A DNA stretch of 64,000 bases from positions 1 through 64,000 of the IMG/VR virus record IMGVR_UViG_3300019458_000021, one strand, 5' to 3'. The notes under the pieces were generated by a model. That model did no database searches and was not told the DNA's origin. It saw only the letters and a program-made list of their open reading frames with translations. Numbering within the stretch: the first letter of the stretch is position 1; the number at the start of each line of letters is the position of its first letter. The position numbers and the translations under genes were made by a program. Of this stretch, positions 5,548 to 56,265 are shown piece after piece.

Positions 5548-5570
5548 GGTGTCTTTTCCCCTGGATTTAG

Positions 5571-5674
5571 GGATATTTATAAATATCCACCAATCATCGT
5601 CAAAAGAAAACATTCAATGATTGGTGGATATTTATAAATATCCACCAATCATCGTCAAAAGAAAACATTCAATG
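5571..5674. repeat. Duplicated 49-nt unit containing an 18-bp palindrome (divergent late promoters); also a 27-bp inverted repeat
   Basis: GGATATTTATAAATATCC at 5571 and 5626; inverted repeat 5571-5597 / 5617-5643. Confidence 0.9.
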
Positions 5675-6575: not shown

Positions 6576-6586
6576 ATTACAACAGA

Positions 6587-6705
6587 GTTGATTGTCGGAA
6601 TAACTGTCTTACGACCGTTGTGTCTACCATTCCACCATAGAACTTACGTGCTAGAAGGACTCGAACCTTCACGTCTTTAGACGAAGTATGTCATTCCTAC
6701 GCAAC
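6587..6705 (-). ncRNA. Structured RNA motif copy A enclosing a permuted tRNA-Leu-like module
   Basis: GTTG-CGTA-GGAATGAC-ATACTTC ... GTTATTCC-GACAAT-CAAC; encloses variable arm, T arm, acceptor, then Leu-type D arm. Confidence 0.7.
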
Positions 6706-6708
6706 TGT

Positions 6709-6777
6709 TGGTCTCCCTACCAAGACTCGAACTTGGTCCGCAACGTCCCGAACGTTGTACGCTCACGCTCTAGGGAG
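6709..6777 (-). tRNA. tRNA-Pro(CGG) with truncated D loop
   Basis: CAACG-TTCGGGA-CGTTG; C1-G72, A73; close relative of Pro(TGG) at 12772. Confidence 0.8.
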
Positions 6778-7226: not shown

Positions 7227-8510
7227 TTACTTGTGAAATTGCTCTTCTTCTGTTGAACCTTTCAAAGCCGTTGTCGAAGATTTACCTGATTGAATTACTT
7301 GAGTAACTTCATCGAAGTAACTTGTACCAACTTCACGTTGGTGTTTCACCGCCGTAAATCCTTTCTCAGCTGCTGCAAACTCCTTCTGTTGAAGTTCAAC
7401 AAAAGCAGTCATGTGATTCCTTGCATATCCATACGCTAGTTCAAACATCGAATAGTTCAGCGAATGAAAGCCAGCAAGAGTGATAAACTGAAACTTGTAT
7501 CCCATTGCGCCAAGCTCTCGTTGGAACATCGCGATTGTAGCATCGTCGAGATTTTTCTTCCAGTTGAACGATGGTGAACAGTTGTACGCTAATATCTTAT
7601 CGGGATATTTGCTATGAATCGCTTCCGCAAATCGTTTTGCAAACGTCAAATCTGGTTTGCCTGTTTCACACCAGATCAAGTCTGCATACGGTGCATATGC
7701 AAGCCCACGCGAAATAGCCTGATCGAGACCGTTGCGAACACAAAAAAATCCCTCTGAAGTTCTCTCGCCAGTCAAGAACGGTTTATCGTTTTCATCAATG
7801 TCACTGGTCAGTAAGTTTGCTGCTTCGGCGTCCGTTCGTGCAAATAGCACTGTTGGCACACCCATAATGTCAGCTGCTAATCTCGCAGCGACTAATTTCT
7901 CTACTGCTTCTTTTGTCGAGACAAGAACTTTACCACCCATGTGGCCACATTTTTTCACTGATGCGAGCTGATCTTCAAAATGAACACCAGCCGCACCTGC
8001 TTTAATCATTGCTTTCATTAGCTCATGTGCATTTAGCACACCACCAAATCCTGCTTCTGCATCTGCAACAATTGGAGCAAAATAATCGACTATGCGACAT
8101 CGGGGATCACCGTTGCTTTCCATGTGTTGGATTTGGTCTGCTCGTTGCAACGCATTGTTGATCCGTGTAACAACGGTTGGAACACTTGTGGCAGCATACA
8201 ACGATTGATCCGGATACATACTCAAACTGTCATTCGCATCAGCCGCAACCTGCCAACCCGACAGGTAAATCGCAGGCACGCCTGCTTTAACTTGCTGAAC
8301 TGCTTGATTGCCTGTTAGTGCACCAAGAGCATTGACGAATGGCCGCGTATGGAGAAGGCTCCACAACTTGTTTGCGCCTTGTCGCGCAAGAGTATGTTCA
8401 ACTTGGATAGACCCACTTAAACGATTAACGTCTTCAGCAGTATATGGTCGCGTTATCCCTTTCCATCTTGCATCTGTTTCCCACTCACGGTGCAATCGGT
8501 TGTCCATCAT
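7227..8510 (-). CDS. aceA: Isocitrate lyase
   Basis: Catalytic KKCGH motif, [18 protein letters not shown]-terminal GSTEEEQF; full length 427 aa. Confidence 0.98.
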
Positions 8511-8573
8511 TGTTCCCTATTGTGAAATGCAGGAGACATTATACACTGAAACTAGTCAATGTTAACACAAACT

Positions 8574-8647
8574 TGGAGCAGCTAGTGAGATTCGAACTCA
8601 CGCCCTAACGCTGGCAACGTCAGATACTACCGTTATACTATAGCTGC
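8574..8647 (-). tRNA. tRNA-Gly(GCC)
   Basis: GCAGCTA/TAGCTGC-T-CCA, loop TT-GCC-AG. Confidence 0.93.
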
Positions 8648-8837
8648 AATTGGATAATTCCTGCATGCACTTTTCGATGACAATTGCTGCACAAGCACAC
8701 GCATTTTTCAACTCTGTTTGATAAATGCCCAGTTGCTTGTTTAGGAAGCGAAACTCGGACGTGGGTTTATTGTCGAGGCAGTTCGAACATTGTTTCATGT
8801 TCATATTTATGTTTCGAAAAACAACCTATTTTCGAAT

Positions 8838-11641: not shown

Positions 11642-11703
11642 TGTACAGGGGTGGAATTGAACCACCGACACGCACGCTGCTCTACCAACTGAGCTACCTG
11701 TAC
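11642..11703 (-). ncRNA. tRNA-like RNA lacking the anticodon arm
   Basis: GTACAGG/CCTGTAC acceptor, canonical D and T arms, only 12 nt between them. Confidence 0.75.
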
Positions 11704-11714
11704 AAAGAGCTTGA

Positions 11715-11809
11715 GTTATTGTGTACACGGAAGACGCTGGATTTGAACCAGCTATGTCTGATTTGTAGTCAGATTTTCAACCAATGAAGTAACCGTTGTA
11801 CTACGCAAC
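11715..11809 (-). ncRNA. Structured RNA motif copy B enclosing anticodon arm (ACA) and T arm
   Basis: GTTG-CGTA-GTACAACGG-TTACTTC ... CCGTGTAC-ACAA-TAAC. Confidence 0.7.
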
Positions 11810-11818
11810 AAGCTTCAG

Positions 11819-11907
11819 CGGAAGGTAGAGGTGTCGATCCCCCAGCAGTTCTTCACCGCTGTTCACTTGTTTTCAAGGCAAGCCTGTTCGCCGGAACAAT
11901 ACCTTCC
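11819..11907 (-). tRNA. tRNA-Ser(TGA)
   Basis: GGAAGGT/ACCTTCC-G, loop CT-TGA-AA, long variable arm. Confidence 0.88.
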
Positions 11908-11981
11908 GTGGCGTTCCCAACCGGATTCGAATCCGGTGTTTCAACCTTCCGTAATGGCGAGCTATTTCACCAAAACAGCTG

Positions 11982-12846: not shown

Positions 12847-12946
12847 AAATTTGTAGCACGACAAAACCACCTCTGTGTGCGTGGCTGTGGGACGCTACTT
12901 TGTCTTATAAACGCTTGGCGGATGACTGTTAGGAACATCAATCGAG

Positions 12947-13092
12947 ATTAAACGTGCAGAGAACATGCGGTTTCCCGCTCGGGTTATGAGCCCGCTTGGC
13001 CCCACGGCCGATTCGCCACAAAAAACACCTCGATGCTCTTTGTGGCGAATTTTAGAGTCGAACTAAATGAAGTAACTCTACTACTGCGCAAC
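12947..13092 (-). ncRNA. Structured RNA motif copy C enclosing a circularly permuted tRNA-Met(CAT)
   Basis: T arm plus ATTCGCC precedes GGCGAAT plus D arm plus CGGG-CTCATAA-CCCG; closed by GTAGTAGAG/TTCTCTGC. Confidence 0.75.
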
Positions 13093-13095
13093 GAT

Positions 13096-13172
13096 TGGTC
13101 TTGGTGACAGGAGTCGAACCTGCGTGGTCTCCGCCCCAAACGGAGTGACTAACCAGACTAGCCTACACCAAG
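13096..13172 (-). tRNA. tRNA-Pro(TGG), second copy
   Basis: CTCCG...loop TT-TGG-GG; CTTGGTG/CACCAAG-A-CCA. Confidence 0.9.
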
Positions 13173-14226: not shown

Positions 14227-14291
14227 CGGCGAAGGAGGGATTCCAACCCCCGTTAGCCCCGCGGGGCTGTTCTCCATTAAACTACCTCGCC
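14227..14291 (-). ncRNA. tRNA-like RNA with anticodon loop collapsed to a tetraloop
   Basis: GGCGAGG/CTTCGCC; AGCCC-CGCG-GGGCT; T loop TTGGAAT. Confidence 0.7.
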
Positions 14292-14302
14292 AATCAAGCT
14301 GA

Positions 14303-14377
14303 GTTAAGATCGCAGACAGCAACAAAGTTCCACCAGGATTCTAGGGCGAAAGTGAAGTAACTGTCTTACTGCGCAAC
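14303..14377 (-). ncRNA. Structured RNA motif copy D
   Basis: GTTG-CGCA-GTAAGACAG-TTACTTC ... CTGTCTGC-GATCT-TAAC. Confidence 0.7.
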
Positions 14378-14381
14378 AACT

Positions 14382-14468
14382 TGGTGCCCTTGACAGGAGT
14401 CGAACCTGCACCCACTTATGTGGCCGATGCTCTCAACGTCGTGCGTTTACCAATTACACCACAAGGGC
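14382..14468 (-). tRNA. tRNA-Leu(GAG), second copy
   Basis: Loop TT-GAG-AG, long variable arm, CCA. Confidence 0.88.
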
Positions 14469-19461: not shown

Positions 19462-19541
19462 TGGTGCTCGAGGGGGGATTCGAACCCCCGACCGATTCGG
19501 TTTTAGAGACCGCCGCTCTGAAACCACTGAGCTACTCGAGC
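19462..19541 (-). tRNA. Amber suppressor tRNA (anticodon CTA)
   Basis: GCTCGAG/CTCGAGC-A-CCA; GCGGT-CT-CTA-AA-ACCGA; perfect T arm. Confidence 0.88.
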
Positions 19542-22653: not shown

Positions 22654-22661
22654 TCCGAAAG

Positions 22662-22734
22662 TAGCGGGAGAGGGAATCGAACGCCCCGGCCTTTAGGTTA
22701 TGAGCCTAACGAGCTGCCACTGCTCTATCCCGCA
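22662..22734 (-). tRNA. tRNA-Met(CAT), 1:72 mismatch
   Basis: TTAGG-CTCATAA-CCTAA. Confidence 0.88.
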
Positions 22735-39858: not shown

Positions 39859-40395
39859 GTGATGTTACTATGGGAAGTGACTGACAAAGAGAAGAAGGGT
39901 TCGTACGCAGGAGTGAGATTTGACACGGCGACGAACAAAGCGATACACAAGTATATCCACGATAACAAAATCCCAACCTCGGTACGTCCGGATCGGCTAC
40001 ACAGTACGCTCTTGTATAGCAGGAAATACCTTCCTAACTACAAGCCAGCTGGTAAGCTTGACAAACCATTGATTGGCACCCCAAAAAGCTTTGAGGTGTG
40101 GAAGACTCGTCCACCGGCCGGCTCTGATGGTAAACCAACAAACTGCCTTGTGTTGAAATATTCGTGCCCCGAACTTGAAACGCGCCACAAAGAGCTGATG
40201 AAGGAGCATAGCGCTCAGTATGACTACGACGAATACTATCCACACATCACTCTTTCGTACGACATTGGCGATATGAACATCAAAGATCTGCCGGACATCA
40301 AAGACACGGTGAAGGAGATCAAAATTGTCGAGGAATATGGTGAGGATCTTGACCTTGATTGGGCACGAAACAAAGGTGTCCGCAAAGGCAGTTAA
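39859..40395 (+). CDS. acb1: Anti-CBASS nuclease Acb1 (T4 gp57B-like 2H phosphoesterase)
   Basis: LHSTLLYS, FEVWKT, YDYDEYYPHITLSY, LDLDW match the T4 57B pattern. Confidence 0.85.
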   Translation: MMLLWEVTDKEKKGSYAGVRFDTATNKAIHKYIHDNKIPTSVRPDRLHSTLLYSRKYLPNYKPAGKLDKPLIGTPKSFEVWKTRPPAGSDGKPTNCLVLKYSCPELETRHKELMKEHSAQYDYDEYYPHITLSYDIGDMNIKDLPDIKDTVKEIKIVEEYGEDLDLDWARNKGVRKGS

Positions 40396-40539: not shown

Positions 40540-40890
40540 AACACTGTGTGAAGCAGCTGCAAGGCGGACAAGACCCGAGTTCGAATCTCGGCATCTCCAC
40601 CAACACGGTTCGAATGATAAGTTGAGTCTAGGGCAGAGGTACAACAGTTGTGAGACACTGCCATTGTGAGAAATGCTAGCAAAGCTCACACACGAACCAC
40701 CTATGGGGGTGAATGGAATTGATTGACGTGCGAGTGGCCAGTGGACAGTGCGAGAGACGACTGACGTAATCAGCGTAAAACGTTAAACGCAAACGACTCT
40801 GCGTACAATGTTGAGGAACTCTACGGAGTAGCTGCTTAACAGCAGCCTTGCCTCGACCGAGCGTGACTGCTTGGGAACAGGAAACGTCAG
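40540..40890 (+). ncRNA. ssrA: Circularly permuted (two-piece) tmRNA
   Basis: Acceptor piece ending CCGAG-TTCGAAT-CTCGG-CATCTCC-ACCA (40602) precedes GGGGGTG (40705) with G3:U70; tag ANDSAYNVEELYGVAA* at 40789-40839. Confidence 0.92.
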
Positions 40891-41286: not shown

Positions 41287-41982
41287 GTGTTTACATATAC
41301 CTACAAGAATTCTCGGGCTGAGGAAGAAGAACAGCCGAAAAAAGATCCGAAGAAGAAGCCATACAACGCGTATGAGACTACCTTCACAGCGGCTCAGGTC
41401 CACTTTTACCTTAGCGAAGAAATTGGCGAACCAAACGAATACACCGACATGATTCATCGGATCCTCGTCGCTGGTCCGAATGACATCATCTTTATCCACC
41501 TGAACACACCTGGAGGTCGGCTCGATACTGGTGTTCAAATTGTCAACGCCATGCAAAATTCTCAGGGCAAGATCATCACAGTTCTCGAAGGAATGGCATT
41601 CTCACTTGGTACATTGATCTTCTTGGCAGGCGACGAAATGATCGTCAACGATCATTGTATGTTGATGTTCCACAACTTCAAGAGTGGTATCTTAGGCAAG
41701 GGTCAGGAACTTGCAGCCCAACTTGAGGCAACAATGAAATGGTTCACCGCTCTTGCAAAGAACCTTTACATTCCCTTCTTGACAGAGGAAGAGTTTAATC
41801 GTATTCTGCGAGGCGAAGACATCTACATTCATTCCCCTGAAATTCGACGACGTCTTGATGTAATGATCAAGCAGATGTCAGAGTCGAAGAAACCCAATAA
41901 AGCTACAAGAATCACAAAGCCAACACCACCACCTGGTAAATTGCGCTACGAGGGTGATGACAAGGGTCGTCCTGCAAAGTGA
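41287..41982 (+). CDS. ClpP-like protease
   Basis: LNTPGG, AFSLGTLIFLAGD (catalytic Ser), LMFH. Confidence 0.85.
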   Translation: MFTYTYKNSRAEEEEQPKKDPKKKPYNAYETTFTAAQVHFYLSEEIGEPNEYTDMIHRILVAGPNDIIFIHLNTPGGRLDTGVQIVNAMQNSQGKIITVLEGMAFSLGTLIFLAGDEMIVNDHCMLMFHNFKSGILGKGQELAAQLEATMKWFTALAKNLYIPFLTEEEFNRILRGEDIYIHSPEIRRRLDVMIKQMSESKKPNKATRITKPTPPPGKLRYEGDDKGRPAK

Positions 41983-50457: not shown

Positions 50458-53400
50458 TCAACCGCACTTGCTCGATCCACAGTTTGTGCACTTGTGGCAC
50501 CCTTCGCTGTAGACAACCAACGTCGATCCACAATCACCACACGTTACACCTTCCGCAGCTTCGCCGTCCTTGATGAACGATGACAGGTACTTCTTGATCT
50601 GGAACAAGAACGTTCCTACAAATACATCTTGGACTCGGTCGAGGGCAGCAACAATGTTTTTGATCAACACTCCATGACGAAGATTCAGACTGATCATACG
50701 AGCAACCTTTGTTGTGTTGTTGTCGACCGCAATCTTCTCGAGCGTCTCGTCGATGTGCTTCTTAGGAATCCCCTTGCTGCAGGCGAGCGCTGTCAGCACT
50801 TCAACAGCATCGTTTGACGTTACGGTTTTCTCATAGCTGTTCGTATGCACGAAGAATCCAAACGGTCGCAGCTTCTGATCATCCCACCAAAGAACGGTCA
50901 GGTACCACTTACGTCCTTCAGCCTTCAACGTCTTCATTGTCGCCGGAGCTGAATCAGGAAGCTTAACGTCTTCAAGGATGATCTCTTCATCGGCATCGGT
51001 TGCTGTTTTCTCGTCTTTGGCGCCAAGAACCGTCGTCATCGTACCGGCGCGATAGGTTGTAACACCTTTAACATATCCTGATGCAAACGCATCTGTGTAA
51101 ATCGACTTGAATTGCTCGAACGGATATTCGTTTGGAACATTGACCGTGTTATGGGAAACAATACCGTTGATGAGATAGCTATGTGTATCTTCCACTTCAA
51201 TATCGTACACATTTTTCAAACCTGCGCTCCGGATATCCGTAACCACAACGCTCGTGAGATGTCGATCAAATTTGAGGCCTGTTTTTTCTATAAACGACAT
51301 TCTAACAAAATTGCCTCTTTGTTGACACTTTCGCAATCTCGCTCTAACCATGCTGCCATATGTATTGCTTGGTTGTTGGGCAATCAATTGTTCAAACACA
51401 TCGTTTGAAATATAAGTTTGTTTCTGTGTTTTGCCCTGCACTGTATATATCATCTTGTGGTCTTCAATAGGTACAATCGTATCCATGTCTTCTAACCAAG
51501 CCGTAACACCATATGTTGTTTTTCCTTCTCCAACATTTCTTGTACAGAGGGAATACTGAACACCCATTGAAGATAACATGTGTGTCACTTTTTCTGCAAC
51601 ATCTTTGGCATACCCATCAAACACAACCAACGAGGCACCATACTCGTTTGTTTTCAAATAGCCATCAAGAGTTAGCCCTTCAATGAAAGCCTTCCAGATT
51701 GAAACCGGGGAATCCAACAGCCATTGAGGGAGATGTTTATTGGCAGCACCGTGTCCAAACTCTTGCTTAAACCAGCGAGCAATCGAATTCGAATGCACAT
51801 AGTGCGTATTGACGCCCCACCTGTCGTCAGTCTGAACATGATGGGTATTAAACAATTGCAGCATCAAACGTTCGCACAGAGCGGATACTTTTTCATTCTT
51901 TTCACAAATTGCAATAGAATGATCGGTCAAGCTTCCATCCGCCACCCACATTCCAAGTAGTAAAGCAAAATCTTCATCGACAACTTGCGGGAACTTCCTA
52001 TGCTTTGCGTTGGCTGCAAATGTTGGTTGAGGAGGGGATACGTAACCTCTCTCGACGACAAATGCGTTTGTGCGATAAAACACCTTGTCTCCAACTTCAA
52101 TATCGTCGAGTGATTTCCATCCCGTAGCACATTTTAGCTTATGGGTATAAGCGGCGGTTATCTCAAATCCGTTGTCAAAACGGACAGTAGCGCAAGGTTT
52201 GACGCCGCCAAAATAATGACGTGTTATTGCCTTTTCCTGACCATTTTCATCAAGAACAGTGAAAGAATCACACGGCACAACAAATCCTTCTTGCGATGGG
52301 TTGTGAATACCCAATGCTTCAACAGGTTTTAATCCCTTGTTTGTCGAAATTAGTGTACCCTCTGCCACACATTTCGACATTGCACTGTCAACCCACCTGG
52401 CGAATCCCTTTAGATCGTTCACATGATCTTTCACATTCAAACTTAGTGCTGTGGCGGCCCAGGAAGCGTTCGAATTCCACTGCTTCTTGCGTTTCATAAC
52501 ACGAACACCGTAATCTTCGCACAAAACTTCCTTTGTTAAACCACGATTCTTATCTATCTTGTAAACGAGTCCATCAGGAGCAACACCACGAAGAATCTCT
52601 TCATCGCCTTCTTTAGTGAACTTAAACATCGACGTTTCGTGCCACGCTCCTTCAAACCATTTAGGTGTGACATCCGCAATGTATTCGGGCATTGTACCAA
52701 CAATCACCGTACGAACGTACTCGTGCAAGAACACCGGTTCAAGTCCACCCGAAACAACATTGGCAAAGATCGACGTGTTACCTGTTGGTTGAATTGAGAG
52801 AAGAGAACTGTTCCGAATACCGTAATTGTTAAGTTTCTCCCAGTATTCCTGTGGAAGATCGAGACTACGAATAAACACGCCTTGCATGTGCTTGTCTGGA
52901 TCACACAAAGAGAACATTCCTTTCTCTTGTGCAAGATCAATTGAAGCCATGTATGCTGACTGTGCAACCGTCCTCATGACTTCATCGCGATACCGATCGG
53001 CGTTCTTGCTTGCGAATTTTGTTTTCAGCATGTAAAGGGCTGATCCCCAGCCAAGAATACCAACACCGATCCGACGTTTGTTCTGAATACTCCACTCATA
53101 TTCTGAAAGAGGAGCCTTCGTGAGATCGTTGATGTTATCGAGGAATCGAACCATGTAGCCTGTGTACTGCGCAATTTTTGCAAGATCAAACCCATCCTCG
53201 ATCACGAACTGTGTAAGGTTAAGCGATCCAAGATTACACACACCGCCAGGAGCAAGTGTTTGTTCACCACATTGTAAATTGTTGATATATGTCCATTTTT
53301 TCTTTCCATTTCTTGTTTGAGTCTCTTGAATACAAACAAAGAAGTTATGGAAGTTATCTACAGTTCCGTTATAAACATTCTGTTTCCCAACATACCTGAC

Positions 53401-56265
53401 TTCAACAACACGGTGGTTTTGATTTGAAGCATATTCCTTGAGATCCGCAAATGAACGATGTGGAGAATGAGGACCAATCAAACAAGCGACGTTCTGTTGT
53501 TTACATTCCTGTTGCCATTCTGTTTTTAATGGCTCACGCTTCAGTGTAGACTTCATGTTGTTATATATTATTGCCTGTTTCTCACGCTTATCTTGTGTGA
53601 TCTTATCAATTGCAGCTTTTGACAAGTCGCTGTATTTTTGCTTGTTCGAGTGGTTTCTGTGTGCCGTATAAGCACGACTACATTCAATCGAACAGAGACC
53701 AACTTCACGATAATGAGCATGAACCTCAAATTTGTCACCACACTGACAACATTCCTTGCGAATAAATAGATTTTGGTTATTGATAATCACATCATACTTC
53801 TGATCTTTGAGGCTAATGTATGTTTTTTGTTGCTTCGGCGACAACGTAGTAAACTCTGAATCCAACCCAACCCGGTCAGCACACTTGATTGAAAGTTCAT
53901 GAACTGATCCAATAGCATCAACTCTCCAAGAACTGAATTGCGTTGGGAGGTTGTGCTCTTTGGCATATTGCTCCCATTCGTTAACAGAGAAGCGTCTACC
54001 GAGTTGTTGTGTCAACGCCGTGGCATGATCTTCAATATCATCATGAGTACATCCCAAGTATCTTGAGTTGTTTTCTCCATTAGTCAAAACCGATGGAGAA
54101 GACACACCACGATATTGCTGCCACTGTTCTTCCGTCCAGTTGGCTTTTGCCCTACGCATTGGATTGTTATCACCACGTATCATCGAGCCATGATATTCAT
54201 CATGGGCTTGTTTGGACATAATTTCCAGGTTGGCTGGATCATTATTCAAGCTATTAAAATCTCTATGGTGAACAACATGCCCCACAGGAACCTTTTGTCC
54301 TGTTGCATACTCAGCAATCAATCTATGTTCTGCTTTGGTTACTCGTCCTAAATTAACCCACATATAATCTTGTGAAGAAAAATTGCTGTTAGGATAGATA
54401 TCTTCCCATGCAGCATGAAACTTATGCATCGTCTTGATGCTATCGCCTGCCATCAAGTCTTTTGTTTGTTTGTATTCTCCGGAAGTCAGTCGCCACTTAT
54501 GGTTGTTCGTGCAGCGAGCAAATGATCCATCTTCAAACACAACTTCATACACGTCCTGATCATATCCGGTAATACGAGGATGACGCATAAGACGGATATC
54601 AACCTCACTCTGGTCGTTGTAACAGAATACGGGGACATCCTTTCCTTCCTCAGCAAGTTGTTGAATTGTCACATTATGGCGTCCATCGGCCACCGCCACC
54701 AGAGTATCGCCCGTAAGGCAAGGGTTGGTTGCGTACACTGTCTCAGCATAGCTGAGAGGAAGAAAATGATTTGCACGATCGAGGAACAGTACGCCTGGCT
54801 CGGCACGATTGTATGTGCTTTGCATGATCAAGTCCCACAACTGCATTGTCGATACTGTCGCGTAGACAACGACACCATATCCCTTCGCTCGCCAATCTTT
54901 CAAATCGCCGTGCCATTCACCTTTATAATGCGGATCTTTTGTATTGGGAAACATAAGTTGCCATGTATCCATCTGTGCTCGATCAGTAGTTAGCTCAGCT
55001 ACCAGCTTCTCGTTTGGATGGTCAAAGGTCATTTCATCCGCAAGAAGTCGATCAATCTCCATTACTCGAAGAACACGAAACATGAAATCGTCCGTACAGT
55101 TAACAGATACGTTGAATTTCGTTAGACGTCCCGGTTGTTGTTTCGCTGTGATGAATTCGATTATGTCTGGATGCCAACAGTTGTGAATAAAGACACCATT
55201 CGCCACGAAGTTATGATATTCAGGCATTGCTATATCAAAAACTTCTTGCTCAATACTCTCCTCTACGCGCACCACTTTGTGGTTTGTGATTAAACGCTTG
55301 TTTAAAGCGGCAAGACTATCACTTGCGATTAAATCTTTTGCTTTTTTATACAACCCATCGCTTAATAAAAATTCGTGGTCGGGTGTGCACTCAATATAAT
55401 CGTCGTTGTTAAATACAACCTTAACAGTTGCTCGTATGCCTTTTGACCATACCATCAATGCCTGACGAACATACACATTACCCTGACCATCAGTGCAATA
55501 CAAGTAGGGTGTTTGACCTACTAACTCTTTGATGGGAACTTTTCCAAACAACGTGTTTATTGGTGTGTTCCCGCCAAGGCAATCCAAGACACCCATCATT
55601 GCGCCCTTACGGATCTTGCCTTTTGCCTTCGTATTCACACTCTTGCGACCAGAACCAGCAGTGATTACGTCAGACACCTTATCAAAGATCTCCATGTACT
55701 TGACAGCACCGGGCGTCTCGACGCCAATACCATCAATGAAGGCACCACGCGGACGAAGGTAAGAGAAGTTTTCACCCCAACCACCTTCTGACTTAAGTGT
55801 ATGTGCCTGAGCTCGAACATGTTCGAAGATGCCGTCGAGACTGTCTGGATCGTATTTCACTCGTGGGCCAGTGAAACAATTCATCAGAGTTGTGCCGCCC
55901 CACTGAGTGCCAGCGTTTGCATAGATCCGACCACCGCACGTTCCCTTGAAGTTTGATAGCAGATTGTAGAACTTCTCGGTCCACTCGAGCCGAAGATCCA
56001 TCGTTTTTTCCATCGAAGCCGCTGCAGCCGCAACACGGAAGATTGTGTCGTTGATGGTTTCATCATTATGATCCTTATACGTACTTGCCCAAACCTCTTC
56101 AGAGAATGCATCCTCAAAAACTGTCGGGTTTTCGTTGATCAGTCGACATTTGAGGAGATAGAGGTAATCGTCTTCGGTTAGGTTATCGCGTGGAGGGGGG
56201 GTCAGGTGATGTGATTGAAAAATGCTAGCGCGTGTCGCTGTATTCTCTTGAACAGAGCTCGACAT
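50458..56265 (-). CDS. nrdJ: Class II (B12-dependent) ribonucleotide reductase with three inteins
   Basis: TLMNC, GGGWG, TNP/CGEQ, RRIGVG, QPTGNTS, KGVTTYR, C-terminal Zn ribbon. Confidence 0.93.
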   Translation of the reverse strand: MSSSVQENTATRASIFQSHHLTPPPRDNLTEDDYLYLLKCRLINENPTVFEDAFSEEVWASTYKDHNDETINDTIFRVAAAAASMEKTMDLRLEWTEKFYNLLSNFKGTCGGRIYANAGTQWGGTTLMNCFTGPRVKYDPDSLDGIFEHVRAQAHTLKSEGGWGENFSYLRPRGAFIDGIGVETPGAVKYMEIFDKVSDVITAGSGRKSVNTKAKGKIRKGAMMGVLDCLGGNTPINTLFGKVPIKELVGQTPYLYCTDGQGNVYVRQALMVWSKGIRATVKVVFNNDDYIECTPDHEFLLSDGLYKKAKDLIASDSLAALNKRLITNHKVVRVEESIEQEVFDIAMPEYHNFVANGVFIHNCWHPDIIEFITAKQQPGRLTKFNVSVNCTDDFMFRVLRVMEIDRLLADEMTFDHPNEKLVAELTTDRAQMDTWQLMFPNTKDPHYKGEWHGDLKDWRAKGYGVVVYATVSTMQLWDLIMQSTYNRAEPGVLFLDRANHFLPLSYAETVYATNPCLTGDTLVAVADGRHNVTIQQLAEEGKDVPVFCYNDQSEVDIRLMRHPRITGYDQDVYEVVFEDGSFARCTNNHKWRLTSGEYKQTKDLMAGDSIKTMHKFHAAWEDIYPNSNFSSQDYMWVNLGRVTKAEHRLIAEYATGQKVPVGHVVHHRDFNSLNNDPANLEIMSKQAHDEYHGSMIRGDNNPMRRAKANWTEEQWQQYRGVSSPSVLTNGENNSRYLGCTHDDIEDHATALTQQLGRRFSVNEWEQYAKEHNLPTQFSSWRVDAIGSVHELSIKCADRVGLDSEFTTLSPKQQKTYISLKDQKYDVIINNQNLFIRKECCQCGDKFEVHAHYREVGLCSIECSRAYTAHRNHSNKQKYSDLSKAAIDKITQDKREKQAIIYNNMKSTLKREPLKTEWQQECKQQNVACLIGPHSPHRSFADLKEYASNQNHRVVEVRYVGKQNVYNGTVDNFHNFFVCIQETQTRNGKKKWTYINNLQCGEQTLAPGGVCNLGSLNLTQFVIEDGFDLAKIAQYTGYMVRFLDNINDLTKAPLSEYEWSIQNKRRIGVGILGWGSALYMLKTKFASKNADRYRDEVMRTVAQSAYMASIDLAQEKGMFSLCDPDKHMQGVFIRSLDLPQEYWEKLNNYGIRNSSLLSIQPTGNTSIFANVVSGGLEPVFLHEYVRTVIVGTMPEYIADVTPKWFEGAWHETSMFKFTKEGDEEILRGVAPDGLVYKIDKNRGLTKEVLCEDYGVRVMKRKKQWNSNASWAATALSLNVKDHVNDLKGFARWVDSAMSKCVAEGTLISTNKGLKPVEALGIHNPSQEGFVVPCDSFTVLDENGQEKAITRHYFGGVKPCATVRFDNGFEITAAYTHKLKCATGWKSLDDIEVGDKVFYRTNAFVVERGYVSPPQPTFAANAKHRKFPQVVDEDFALLLGMWVADGSLTDHSIAICEKNEKVSALCERLMLQLFNTHHVQTDDRWGVNTHYVHSNSIARWFKQEFGHGAANKHLPQWLLDSPVSIWKAFIEGLTLDGYLKTNEYGASLVVFDGYAKDVAEKVTHMLSSMGVQYSLCTRNVGEGKTTYGVTAWLEDMDTIVPIEDHKMIYTVQGKTQKQTYISNDVFEQLIAQQPSNTYGSMVRARLRKCQQRGNFVRMSFIEKTGLKFDRHLTSVVVTDIRSAGLKNVYDIEVEDTHSYLINGIVSHNTVNVPNEYPFEQFKSIYTDAFASGYVKGVTTYRAGTMTTVLGAKDEKTATDADEEIILEDVKLPDSAPATMKTLKAEGRKWYLTVLWWDDQKLRPFGFFVHTNSYEKTVTSNDAVEVLTALACSKGIPKKHIDETLEKIAVDNNTTKVARMISLNLRHGVLIKNIVAALDRVQDVFVGTFLFQIKKYLSSFIKDGEAAEGVTCGDCGSTLVVYSEGCHKCTNCGSSKCG
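51148..52371 (-). mobile_element. Intein 3 in nrdJ with LAGLIDADG endonuclease (408 aa)
   Basis: K/CVAEGT ... GMWVADG ... GLTLDG ... VSHN/T. Confidence 0.9.
53272..54720 (-). mobile_element. Intein 2 in nrdJ with HNH endonuclease, C-terminal Gln (483 aa)
   Basis: P/CLTGDT ... HHRDFNSLNN ... NNLQ/CGEQ. Confidence 0.88.
55180..55581 (-). mobile_element. Mini-intein 1 in nrdJ (134 aa)
   Basis: D/CLGGNT ... FIHN/C; no endonuclease domain. Confidence 0.9.

What the first reader, a model, noticed from the sequence alone, without database searches (positions are those of the whole stretch)
12947..13092. Circularly permuted initiator-like tRNA-Met inside motif copy C
In transcript order: T arm (TTTAG-TTCGACT-CTAAA) and acceptor 3' strand ATTCGCC, a self-pairing linker of about 27 nt, then acceptor 5' strand GGCGAAT (perfect complement), a mini D arm, CGGG-CTCATAA-CCCG (initiator-type G-C run) and a GCGG-GAAA-CCGC variable arm. 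The two ends are clamped by the motif's P2 helix and share a CAT microrepeat. Established: permuted tRNA genes matured through a circular intermediate are known from red and green algae and an archaeon. I know of none from phages.
Basis: partly seen in the sequence, partly recalled or inferred. Interest (0 to 1): 0.82.

Follow-up and report, generated by a model that had tools for sequence, protein, structure and literature searches.

The report
Phage Y RNA with tRNA-like module
The "permuted tRNA-Met" is real as a sequence pattern. It is best read as the tRNA-mimicking domain of a Y RNA, a small non-coding RNA that partners with Ro60 proteins and in which this reversed order is normal, so it is not a new kind of phage tRNA gene.

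Summary
After re-joining the halves, ARAGORN calls a tRNA-Met (CAU).

The "motif" that clamps the two ends turned out to be the closing stem of a family of phage Y RNAs of the YrlA type:
- The same 5' box (UGCGNAG, a spacer, then UACUU), with covarying P1 and P2 helices, lies directly upstream of TROVE+vWA (Ro60/Rsr) genes in many viral contigs. There are 56 hits on the Ro60 strand in 27 of 79 loci, and none on the other strand.
- Several members hit Rfam YrlA (RF02553) at 38-48 bits, below that family's cut-off.
- A covariance model built only from Ro60-linked members of other phages gives four top hits in the window: copy D (62.7 bits), copy C, which is the finding (33.0 bits, E 2e-7), copy B and copy A.

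T arm, then capped acceptor stem, then D arm is the normal YrlA order. By the same ARAGORN test, 14 of 24 larger relatives also "re-join" into a tRNA.

Copy C is unusual in two ways. It carries an extra initiator-type anticodon hairpin and a GAAA hairpin, and no Ro60 gene lies in the first ~83 kb of the contig. A circular intermediate is neither needed nor supported. Verdict: a new variant of a known kind, of moderate interest.

The parts
12939..13097 (-). Whole Y RNA-like gene, copy C (159 nt), from the P1 5' strand to the P1 3' strand
   Evidence: Model R2, built from 13 Ro60-linked YrlA-like RNAs of other phages, matches 13097-12939 over its full length at 33.0 bits, E 2.2e-7. Fold energy z = -4.9.
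13092..13097 (-). P1 5' strand CAATCG. It overlaps the terminal CA of the upstream tRNA-Pro.
   Evidence: Pairs perfectly with CGATTG at 12944-12939. P1 differs in sequence but stays paired in copies A, B, D and in relatives.
13084..13091 (-). Conserved box UUGCGCAG, the window's form of the family box NUGCGNAG and the putative Ro60-contact region
   Evidence: Invariant columns in alignments A2 and A3. The same box lies upstream of Ro60 genes in 27 of 79 loci.
13076..13083 (-). 4-nt bulge TAGT and P2b 5' strand AGAG
   Evidence: AGAG pairs with TTCT at 12963-12960. The other copies show ACGG/CCGT, ACAG/CTGT and AGGG/CCCT (sequences). P2 covaries in A2 and A3.
13068..13075 (-). UUACUUCA. UUAC fits the YUAY that opens the V loop of YrlA RNAs.
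   Evidence: Invariant in the family. YUAY is described in PMC4201824.
13051..13067 (-). T arm TTTAG-TTCGACT-CTAAA
   Evidence: Aligned to the T arm of model R2 and to the T arm of a tmRNA model.
13011..13050 (-). Acceptor-like stem-loop: 3' strand 13050-13044, 11-bp extension with CGAG loop 13043-13018, 5' strand 13017-13011
   Evidence: An 18-bp hairpin in the minimum-energy fold. Aligned to the acceptor stem-loop of R2 with a 19-nt insertion.
12998..13009 (-). Mini D-like hairpin GGCC-GTGG-GGCC
   Evidence: It replaces the conserved D arm of the family and is skipped as a local end by R2.
12980..12994 (-). Anticodon-like hairpin CGGG-CTCATAA-CCCG, with a 7-nt loop holding CAU
   Evidence: An 11-nt exact match to the anticodon arm of the window's initiator-like tRNA at 22661-22734.
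12967..12978 (-). Extra hairpin GCGG-GAAA-CCGC
   Evidence: An 87-nt initiator-like tRNA-Met of a related phage has the same architecture (GCAC-GAAA-GTGC) at L141:18735-18821.
12945..12963 (-). P2b 3' strand TTCT, P2a 3' strand CTGCAC, and the conserved 3' junction GTTTAATCT
   Evidence: Coordinates. Aligned to the 3' strand and to the UUGAUCUC-type junction of R2.
12939..12944 (-). P1 3' strand CGATTG
6580..6710 (-). Paralogue copy D: a YrlA-like RNA with T arm, short acceptor-like stem and Leu-type D arm
   Evidence: R2 62.7 bits, E 2.4e-15, full length. An ortholog lies at about L141:18923-19040.
11708..11814 (-). Paralogue copy A: the closing stem encloses a D-like hairpin, an anticodon-like hairpin and a T arm, in normal order
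   Evidence: R1 34.3 bits, R2 28.8 bits. A partial Rfam tRNA hit at 11736-11791.
14296..14382 (-). Paralogue copy B: closing stem with a short, decaying insert
   Evidence: R1 32.4 bits, R2 31.7 bits. A 99%-identical strain has different deletions here.
13096..13172 (-). Upstream tRNA-Pro (UGG), whose 3' end abuts P1
   Evidence: ARAGORN and Rfam tRNA at 46 bits.

Best explanation
Copy C (window 13097-12939, minus strand) is one of four paralogous Y RNA genes of the YrlA type that sit in the spacers of this jumbo phage's tRNA array.

Architecture:
- The RNA begins right after the CCA end of a tRNA-Pro.
- Its two ends pair as P1, followed by an internal loop that carries the conserved box UUGCGCAG on one side and UUUAAUCU on the other, and then a bulged P2 helix. 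This rod is the equivalent of the Ro60-binding stem of Y RNAs.
- The apical part is a tRNA mimic written in the order that any such rod-closed mimic must have: variable-loop start (UUAC), T arm, acceptor stem capped by a hairpin, then the D side.
- Copy C additionally carries an initiator-type anticodon hairpin and a GAAA hairpin after a reduced D hairpin. As a result, its rod sits where a long variable arm would sit, not where the anticodon stem would.

Shown here: the homology of the rod and of the T and acceptor parts to RNAs encoded directly upstream of phage Ro60 genes, and the co-variation of P1 and P2.

Inferred:
- The RNA is co-transcribed with the tRNAs and released by their processing.
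- It binds a Ro60/Rsr protein, either the host's or one encoded elsewhere in the phage genome.
- Its 7-bp acceptor stem may let RNase P open the cap and allow CCA addition, as described for Mycobacterium smegmatis YrlA. The two pieces would then be held together by the acceptor stem and the rod.

No circular intermediate and no decoding role are needed.
For: 1. The 5' box with P1 and P2 recurs in other phages immediately upstream of 519-521 aa TROVE+vWA proteins on the same strand: L145, L151, L268 (Pfam), and L150, L148, L112, L064 (tblastn).
2. In 79 Ro60 loci, the relaxed box occurs 56 times on the Ro60 strand, almost always within 1.2 kb upstream of the gene, and never on the other strand.
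3. L144:1396-1506 carries the same box. Rfam YrlA RF02553 aligns to it over the full model at 47.7 bits, E 8e-10. L334, L321 and L341 give 47.5, 41.4 and 38.5 bits.
4. Consensus fold of 13 Ro60-linked members: P1, P2, T arm, acceptor stem-loop, D arm. 24 of 29 pairs show compensatory changes.
5. For 12 minimal members, 92.9% of cells are paired and the covariation score is 0.88, against 0.21 in shuffles (0 of 500 reach it).
6. Model R2, which contains no window sequence, ranks copies D, C, B and A as the four best hits in window 1-24000 (62.7, 33.0, 31.7, 28.8 bits; the next is 17.7). It aligns copy C's P1, box, P2, UUACUUC, T arm and acceptor stem-loop. Model R1, built from minimal members, finds A and B.
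7. By the same ARAGORN test, 14 of 24 larger relatives also give a tRNA when their inner part is re-joined.
8. PMC4201824 describes the order 5' stem, YUAY, V, T, acceptor stem-loop, D. It reports YrlA in 22 phages. [quoted passage not shown]
Against: - No Ro60 gene lies in the window, in contig positions 1 to about 83 kb, or in 21.7 kb of the closest relatives. A Ro60 profile finds nothing there at E up to 10, while the positive control scores 1e-157.
- The window's contig is not among the 80 best Ro60-encoding viral contigs. In a related 229-kb phage, Ro60 sits next to a prs homologue; the syntenic spot in the window has none.
- Rfam YrlA does not match copy C or copy D even at E up to 10. 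Relatives stay below its cut-off of 69 bits.
- The box differs from the published GNCGAAN0-1G.
- Copy C lacks the family's conserved D arm, and R2 has to skip 38 nt there.
- Copy B differs by independent deletions between two 99%-identical strains, which suggests relaxed selection on at least some orphan copies.
- There are no expression or binding data.
Confidence: 0.82

Rival explanations
1. This is a true circularly permuted tRNA-Met gene. The transcript is cut at the P2-clamped ends and ligated into a circle. RNase P and a 3' nuclease then open the linker, and the product decodes AUG.
For: The re-joined sequence is called tRNA-Met by ARAGORN for every junction tried and folds as a cloverleaf. 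It has a canonical T loop and a canonical 7-nt anticodon loop with CAU, and A73. G2-C71 and C3-G70 match E. coli elongator tRNA-Met (from memory). All helices are free of mismatches. The same phage carries a permuted tmRNA gene, so permuted tRNA-like genes are handled in this system.
Against: - The clamping stem belongs to the Ro60-linked Y RNA family.
- 14 of 24 relatives pass the same ARAGORN test.
- The D region is 15 nt where canonical tRNAs have 18-22, it has C8 where nearly all tRNAs have U8, and its D loop is 4 nt. No CCA is encoded, unlike most tRNAs of the array.
- The P2 helix has one 4-nt bulge on one strand only, so it is not a bulge-helix-bulge motif.
- No splicing endonuclease, RtcB or RNA ligase turned up among the window ORFs scanned. 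Permuted tmRNA needs no ligation.
- Copy C has no ortholog outside its own species, and the related phages lack this copy.
Confidence: 0.03
2. A two-piece tRNA-Met. RNase P and CCA addition open the acceptor cap. The two pieces stay together through the acceptor stem and the P1-P2 rod, which acts as an open long variable arm. The RNA is charged by MetRS and used in translation, or serves as a charged mimic.
For: [quoted passage not shown] It has A73 followed by C, so adding CA would complete CCA. The CAU anticodon loop is intact. Two-piece tmRNA is encoded in the same window.
Against: The D arm is aberrant. A rod of about 17 bp plus a further hairpin would sit at the variable position. No relative conserves this arrangement. 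The window already has two CAU tRNAs. No data on processing or charging exist.
Confidence: 0.06
3. An orphan relic. The four window copies are decaying remnants of a Y RNA array left after the phage lost its Ro60 gene. Copy C is a recent recombinant between such a remnant and a long-variable-arm initiator-like tRNA gene, and it has no present function.
For: No Ro60 lies in about 83 kb or at the syntenic site. Copy B carries strain-specific deletions. Copy A lacks acceptor and D parts. The neighbouring tRNA-like genes at 11642-11703 and 14227-14291 have lost their anticodon loops. L141:18735-18821 shows a plausible donor architecture.
Against: All six helices of copy C are intact, including 18 bp of acceptor plus linker in which the only non-Watson-Crick pairs are G-U on the tRNA-sense strand. 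Copy D is conserved between the window phage and L141, which share only about 70% DNA identity. About 150 kb of the contig remains unseen.
Confidence: 0.25
4. Chance juxtaposition of unrelated tRNA gene fragments in a recombination-prone array rich in homing endonucleases, with no relation to Y RNAs.
For: The array holds an HNH endonuclease gene 300 nt away and several broken tRNA-like genes.
Against: The acceptor strands are perfectly complementary and extend to 18 bp. The same closing stem with co-variation recurs in four window copies and in dozens of Ro60-linked RNAs.
Confidence: 0.02

Closest known systems
YrlA-type bacterial and phage Y RNAs (Rfam RF02553; Chen et al. 2014, PMC4201824)
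   Same: A rod formed by the 5' and 3' ends, with an internal loop and conserved 5'-strand bases. YUAY opens the variable region. Then come the T arm, an acceptor-like stem closed by a loop, and the D side. Relatives of the window motif are encoded directly upstream of TROVE+vWA genes and give sub-threshold RF02553 hits.
   Different: The box is UUGCGYAG, or GUGCGAAG in the wider phage family, and not GNCGAAN0-1G. RF02553 does not detect copy C or copy D. No Ro60 gene lies within about 83 kb. The copies sit inside a tRNA array. Copy C has a reduced D hairpin plus an anticodon hairpin and a GAAA hairpin, so its rod lies at the variable-arm position.
Mycobacterium smegmatis YrlA
   Same: A 7-bp acceptor stem. 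There the RNA is cut by RNase P and receives CA to complete CCA, giving two pieces bound by Rsr. Copy C likewise has A73 and C after a 7-bp stem.
   Different: Processing of copy C has not been tested, and its acceptor stem continues for 11 more base pairs.
Deinococcus radiodurans Yrn1
   Same: A Y RNA that can be drawn with a T arm and a possible anticodon arm.
   Different: Yrn1 has a 6-nt loop and no full D arm. Copy C has a canonical 7-nt loop with CAU. The paper considers Yrn1 to have arisen independently of YrlA.
Circularly permuted tRNA genes of Cyanidioschyzon merolae, some green algae and an archaeon (from memory; reviewed in PMC4238349, found but not read)
   Same: The 3' half lies upstream of the 5' half, and the cloverleaf is intact after re-joining.
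   Different: Those genes use a bulge-helix-bulge motif, the splicing endonuclease and a ligase, and they yield canonical tRNAs. Here there is no such motif, no such enzymes were found, the core is non-canonical, and the flanks are a Y RNA stem.
Two-piece tmRNA from permuted genes (one is at window 40542-40839, RF04321, 97 bits)
   Same: T arm and acceptor 3' strand are encoded ahead of the acceptor 5' strand, and the linker is removed without ligation. A weak beta_tmRNA hit covers 13067-13011.
   Different: Copy C has no G3-U70, no tag reading frame and no pseudoknots. The score is 17 bits against a cut-off of 84.

Membership tests
YrlA-type Y RNA | tRNA-like module in the order T arm, acceptor-like stem-loop, D side, enclosed by a stem made of the RNA's two ends | tested here: met
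YrlA-type Y RNA | YUAY at the start of the variable region, just after the closing stem | tested here: met
   UUAC at 13075-13072. Invariant UACUU in A2 and A3.
YrlA-type Y RNA | Conserved Ro60-contact motif GNCGAAN0-1G near the 5' end | tested here: inconclusive
   Copy C has UUGCGCAG. The literal pattern is absent. However, UUGCGUAG and GUGCGAAG forms of the same box lie directly upstream of Ro60 genes.
YrlA-type Y RNA | Encoded within a few kb of a Ro60/TROVE gene on the same strand | tested here: not met
   No TROVE in the window, in contig positions to about 83 kb, or in the nearest relatives. This feature is met for many other carriers of the same stem. The remaining ~150 kb of the contig was not seen.
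YrlA-type Y RNA | Score at or above the RF02553 gathering cut-off (69 bits) | tested here: not met
   No hit for copy C at E up to 10. Relatives score 38-48 bits.
YrlA-type Y RNA | Match to a covariance model of Ro60-linked phage Y RNAs built here | tested here: met
   R2: 33.0 bits, E 2.2e-7, full model. Second-best hit in window 1-24000.
YrlA-type Y RNA | Physical binding to Ro60/Rsr | not testable with these tools
   Needs immunoprecipitation or in-vitro binding.
Circularly permuted tRNA gene | 3' half upstream of 5' half, giving a cloverleaf after re-joining | tested here: met
   The test is not specific: 14 of 24 Y RNA relatives pass it too.
Circularly permuted tRNA gene | Canonical tRNA core (U8, two nucleotides before the D stem, D loop of 7-11 nt) | tested here: not met
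   C8, one linking nucleotide and a 4-nt D loop. The window's own tRNAs are canonical in these features.
Circularly permuted tRNA gene | Bulge-helix-bulge motif at the ends, plus a splicing endonuclease and ligase | tested here: not met
   P2 has a single 4-nt bulge on the 5' strand only. No such enzymes among the window ORFs scanned. The rest of the genome was not seen.
Circularly permuted tRNA gene | Orthologs in which the two acceptor strands co-vary | tested here: inconclusive
   The only other copy is identical, in a 99% strain. No other contig holds it.
Circularly permuted tRNA gene | Circular RNA intermediate | not testable with these tools
   Needs junction RT-PCR or RNase R treatment.
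Two-piece tmRNA | G3-U70, a tag reading frame, pseudoknots, and a family score above cut-off | tested here: not met
   C3-G70. No frame or pseudoknots. beta_tmRNA 17.2 bits against 84.

The most novel reading that the evidence does not exclude
Copy C is a Y RNA that has kept or captured a complete initiator-type anticodon arm. [quoted passage not shown] Such a mimic could be charged by MetRS or bound by initiation factors, anticodon nucleases or tRNA-modifying enzymes. The phage would then have a decoy or tether that links Ro60-type RNA surveillance to initiator tRNA biology.
Probability: 0.07. Interest if true: 0.8.

Novelty: new variant of a known kind. Interest (0 to 1): 0.4.

Why it matters
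The finding would have been the first permuted tRNA gene in a virus. The evidence shows instead that it belongs to a known class, Ro60-partner Y RNAs that mimic tRNA.

The work does bring out several useful points:
- There is a large, divergent phage branch of that class which the Rfam YrlA model detects only below its threshold.
- Members often stand in tandem arrays of two to five genes upstream of phage Ro60.
- Some members are minimal and others carry tRNA-like modules.
- The family occurs in both circular permutations, open either at the rod or at the acceptor stem.
- In this jumbo phage, four copies are scattered through the tRNA array with no Ro60 gene nearby. One of them carries an intact CAU anticodon hairpin.

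This raises testable questions: whether phage Y RNAs use the host's Ro60, and what the tRNA mimicry is for.

It also gives a practical warning. Any scan for permuted tRNA genes in phages and bacteria will pick up Y RNAs.

Tried and rejected
- BLAST of the region against GenBank phages, near and distant modes: no match.
- A viral scan with a mistyped spacer (8 N where the motif has 7) returned mostly chance hits. Two of them, L064 and L112, later proved to be real Ro60 loci.
Only L268 was real.
- Search for a donor tRNA: no tRNA of the window or of L001/L002 resembles the re-joined sequence beyond 11 nt of the anticodon arm. The anticodon-plus-GAAA-hairpin pattern occurs in no other viral contig.
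- Strain comparison: 0 differences in copy C between two 99%-identical strains, where about 1.4 would be expected. This is uninformative.
- Known ribozymes, riboswitches and other Rfam families for the motif: nothing at E up to 10.
- The two ~490-aa proteins next to the array are not Ro60. One has an N-terminal vWA domain only, and the other is unassigned.
- Model R1, built from minimal members, could not span copy C's 120-nt insert and gave a spurious 11.7-bit alignment. The larger model R2 could span it.
- Walking along the contig to look for Ro60 stopped at about 83 kb. A 3549-aa gene there is longer than the flank the tool returns.
- Promoter and terminator scans around the copies found nothing above chance.
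- Thermodynamic folding of the unpermuted relatives did not reproduce the rod. That reading rests on homology of the conserved blocks.
- Earlier ideas considered and dropped: integron attC-like site, homing-endonuclease target, promoter, self-cleaving ribozyme.

Full report
**Context.** The window is the first 64 kb of a 237-kb metagenomic phage contig. It carries a minus-strand array of 26 ARAGORN tRNA genes between 545 and 22734, plus one plus-strand tRNA at 29567-29640, and a permuted tmRNA gene at 40542-40839. It also encodes ClpP, ClpS, a Thg1-like protein, DNA replication genes and several homing endonucleases. It has no match among GenBank phages.

On the minus strand, 13067 to 12967 reads as follows:
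- T arm
- acceptor 3' strand
- a linker that continues the acceptor helix to 18 bp with a CGAG loop
- acceptor 5' strand
- a 4-bp hairpin with a 4-nt loop
- CGGG-CTCATAA-CCCG
- GCGG-GAAA-CCGC

Joining the 5' half to the 3' half gives an ARAGORN tRNA-Met for all 16 junctions tried, and the minimum-energy fold is a cloverleaf. The native stretch is far more stable than shuffles, z = -4.9.

There are four weak points for a real tRNA:
- Position 8 is C, only one nucleotide precedes the D stem, and the D loop has 4 nt.
- No CCA is encoded, although most tRNAs of the array encode it.
- Pair 1-72 is G-C, so the acceptor end is not of initiator type.
- Rfam's tRNA model sees nothing in the 5' half even at E up to 10.

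**The motif.** The 5' box GCGYAGTA..A..GTTACTTCA occurs three times in the window, against 0.05 expected. The sequence just before each box pairs with the sequence just before the next tRNA or tRNA-like gene (P1). The four variable nucleotides of the box pair with a tetranucleotide downstream (P2b). Both helices change sequence between copies yet stay paired. The part enclosed by P2 differs in each copy:
- Copy A holds a D-like hairpin, an anticodon-like hairpin and a T arm.
- Copy C holds the permuted module.
- Copy B holds a short remnant.

A metagenome scan found the motif in a few other phage lineages. Inserts there are as short as 18 nt (L130, L126). In L126 the motif lies outside any tRNA array, behind a promoter-like sequence. 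Copy C itself exists only in this phage and in a 99%-identical strain, where it is unchanged.

**The turn.** A looser scan of viral contigs brought in members whose insert is T arm, capped acceptor stem and a canonical D arm. Rfam's YrlA model (RF02553, "Y RNA-like") aligns over its full length to one of these, L144:1396-1506, at 47.7 bits, E 8e-10.

In L145, L151 and L268 the motif-bearing RNA is followed at once, on the same strand, by a 519-521 aa TROVE+vWA protein, that is, a Ro60/Rsr ortholog. tblastn adds L148, L150, L064 and L112, the last two with five tandem RNAs upstream of Ro60.

Using an alignment of five such proteins, 366 viral contigs with a Ro60 relative were found and the best 80 fetched. 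In 27 of the 79 distinct loci the relaxed box NTGCGNAG-N6-9-TACTTN occurs. There are 56 occurrences on the Ro60 strand, nearly all within 1.2 kb upstream of the gene, and none on the opposite strand.

The commonest form of the box is GGUGCGAAGG. From memory, it differs from the Ro-binding GGUCCGAAGG of human Y1 RNA by one base. The 3' partner CGAC-UUGAUCUC is also conserved.

**Structure of the family.**
- Twelve minimal members give P1 (6 bp) and P2 (7 bp) with 92.9% of cells paired. The covariation score is 0.88 against 0.21 in shuffles, and it collapses when partners are slid. P1 pairing was part of my rule for finding the 3' end, so its 100% is partly by construction. P2 was not selected for.
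- Thirteen larger members give P1, P2, T arm, acceptor stem-loop and D arm, and 24 of 29 pairs show compensatory changes.
- This is the YrlA plan described by Chen et al. (PMC4201824). That paper also reports YrlA in 22 phages, YrlB-type partners without the tRNA module, and RNase P cleavage plus CCA completion for the one YrlA with a 7-bp acceptor stem.
- Further sub-threshold RF02553 hits fall on L334, L321 and L341.

**Membership of the window copies.** Model R2 was built from the 13 larger members of other phages. Searched without filters over window 1-24000, it gives these four best hits:

| Copy | Window position (minus strand) | Bits | E-value |
|---|---|---|---|
| D | 6710-6580 | 62.7 | 2.4e-15 |
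| C | 13097-12939 | 33.0 | 2.2e-7 |
| B | 14382-14296 | 31.7 | 4.7e-7 |
| A | 11814-11708 | 28.8 | 2.9e-6 |

The next hit scores 17.7 bits. For copy C the model aligns P1, the box, P2, UUACUUC, the T arm and the acceptor stem-loop (with a 19-nt insertion). It treats the 38 nt of D, anticodon and GAAA hairpins as a local end.

Model R1, built from minimal members, finds A and B at 34 and 32 bits.

A tRNA spanning the junction is called in 15 of 25 cases. One of these is copy C itself, and the other 14 of 24 are relatives. "Re-joins into a tRNA" is therefore a property of the family and not evidence for a permuted tRNA gene.

**What is special about copy C.**
- Its D arm is reduced. It carries a self-contained anticodon hairpin with a canonical CAU loop and a GGG/CCC stem, followed by a GAAA-capped hairpin.
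- The rod therefore sits where a long variable arm would, whereas in typical members P2 stands in for the anticodon stem.
- A related phage has an 87-nt initiator-like tRNA-Met with the same anticodon arm plus GAAA hairpin layout, at L141:18735-18821. A recombinant origin is plausible, but this is inference.
- One Ro60-linked member, L331:2466-2611, also has a hairpin after its D arm.

**Ro60 in this phage.** None was found.
- Pfam and PHROGs on the scanned window ORFs found none.
- A Ro60 profile finds nothing at E up to 10 in six-frame translations of the window, of contig positions 53-83 kb, or of the nearest relatives. The control scores 1e-157.
- The contig is not among the 80 best Ro60 contigs.
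- In a related 229-kb phage, Ro60 and its Y RNA array sit next to a prs homologue. The corresponding site in the window (26.3-26.4 kb) has none.
- About 150 kb of the contig remains unseen, because the walk was blocked by a 10.6-kb gene.
- Copy B shows independent deletions in two strains, so some copies may be decaying. Copy D is conserved between phages that share only about 70% DNA identity, and copy C has no helix defect.

**Mechanism, as far as it can be argued.**
- Shown: homology and co-varying structure.
- Inferred: co-transcription with the tRNAs, since no promoter or terminator stands out. Release by processing of the flanking tRNAs. Binding of a Ro60/Rsr. Possible RNase P opening of the 7-bp acceptor stem with CCA completion, by analogy with M. 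smegmatis YrlA.
- Ligation into a circle is not required by any step, and nothing in the sequence calls for it.

**Comparison and verdict.** Copy C works like, and by sequence and structure models belongs to, the YrlA-type Y RNAs. It fails two of that family's usual criteria, an adjacent Ro60 gene and the RF02553 cut-off, and it adds an anticodon hairpin. I therefore rate it a new variant of a known kind. The claim of a permuted phage tRNA gene matured through a circle is left with about 3% probability.

Noticed in passing
window 40542-40839 (+): Permuted (two-piece) tmRNA gene, Rfam RF04321 at 97.2 bits. It lies just upstream of a ClpP-like protease gene (41287-41982).
   Followed up: partly
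window 6580-6710, 11708-11814, 14296-14382 (all -): Three further Y RNA-like genes (copies D, A, B) lie in spacers of the tRNA array. D is a full YrlA-like RNA (62.7 bits with model R2). B differs by separate deletions in a 99%-identical strain.
   Followed up: yes
L306:2686-2822, L304:2800-2945, L147 (about 60 nt either side of its motif): Unpermuted relatives. These are normal-order tRNA-like genes (acceptor, D arm, T arm) in which the anticodon arm is replaced by the same Ro-type rod, capped by a GTAA or UCAC loop. Two of them sit directly upstream of Ro60. The family therefore exists in both circular permutations. This reading rests on homology of the conserved blocks; thermodynamic folding did not reproduce the rod.
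   Followed up: partly
L331:2629-2805: A manA RNA hit (RF01745, 57.4 bits, above its cut-off) lies inside an array of Y RNA genes upstream of a phage Ro60 gene. This hints that manA RNAs may be Ro60-associated.
   Followed up: no
window 11642-11703 and 14227-14291 (-): Two tRNA-like genes cannot decode. One is a tRNA-Phe homologue with the whole anticodon arm deleted; it is intact in L001. In the other a tetraloop replaces the anticodon loop, and its L001 ortholog has a non-canonical AAATGGA loop.
   Followed up: partly
window about 11823-11930 (-); L001 about 7694-7785: A tRNA-like gene that neither ARAGORN nor Rfam calls. It has an 8-bp acceptor stem, a long variable arm, an ATCGACA T loop and a 9-nt loop on a 4-bp anticodon-like stem. 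The acceptor stem shows a compensatory change between the two phages.
   Followed up: no
L141:18735-18821: An 87-nt initiator-like tRNA-Met (C1xA72, GGG/CCC) with a long variable arm capped by GAAA. This is an unusual class-II-like Met tRNA, and no ortholog was found in the window.
   Followed up: partly
window 19462-19541 (-): A high-scoring tRNA (64 bits) with anticodon CUA, that is, an amber suppressor. Relatives carry two such genes. This may point to TAG read-through or recoding in this phage group.
   Followed up: no
window 33529-34455 (+), 39859-40395 (+), 31631-33487 (+), 50458-56265 (-): A Thg1-like tRNA 5'-end repair enzyme, an Acb1-type anti-CBASS phosphodiesterase, PhoH interrupted by a LAGLIDADG intein, and a ribonucleotide reductase with several inteins and an HNH domain.
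   Followed up: no
window 7227-8813 versus L129: Part of the stretch with tRNA-Gly and the isocitrate lyase gene (about 7375-7869 and 7906-8812) has no counterpart in the 99%-identical strain. This is a strain-specific insertion or deletion inside the tRNA array.
   Followed up: no
window 5564-5673: Two tandem 55-bp repeats (95% identical), each containing a palindrome ATATTTATAAATAT.
   Followed up: no
L360 (ENA k141_439466, 351,809 bp): The same phage region occurs on a 352-kb contig from another assembly. The genome may be larger than the 237-kb contig, or that assembly may be concatenated.
   Followed up: no
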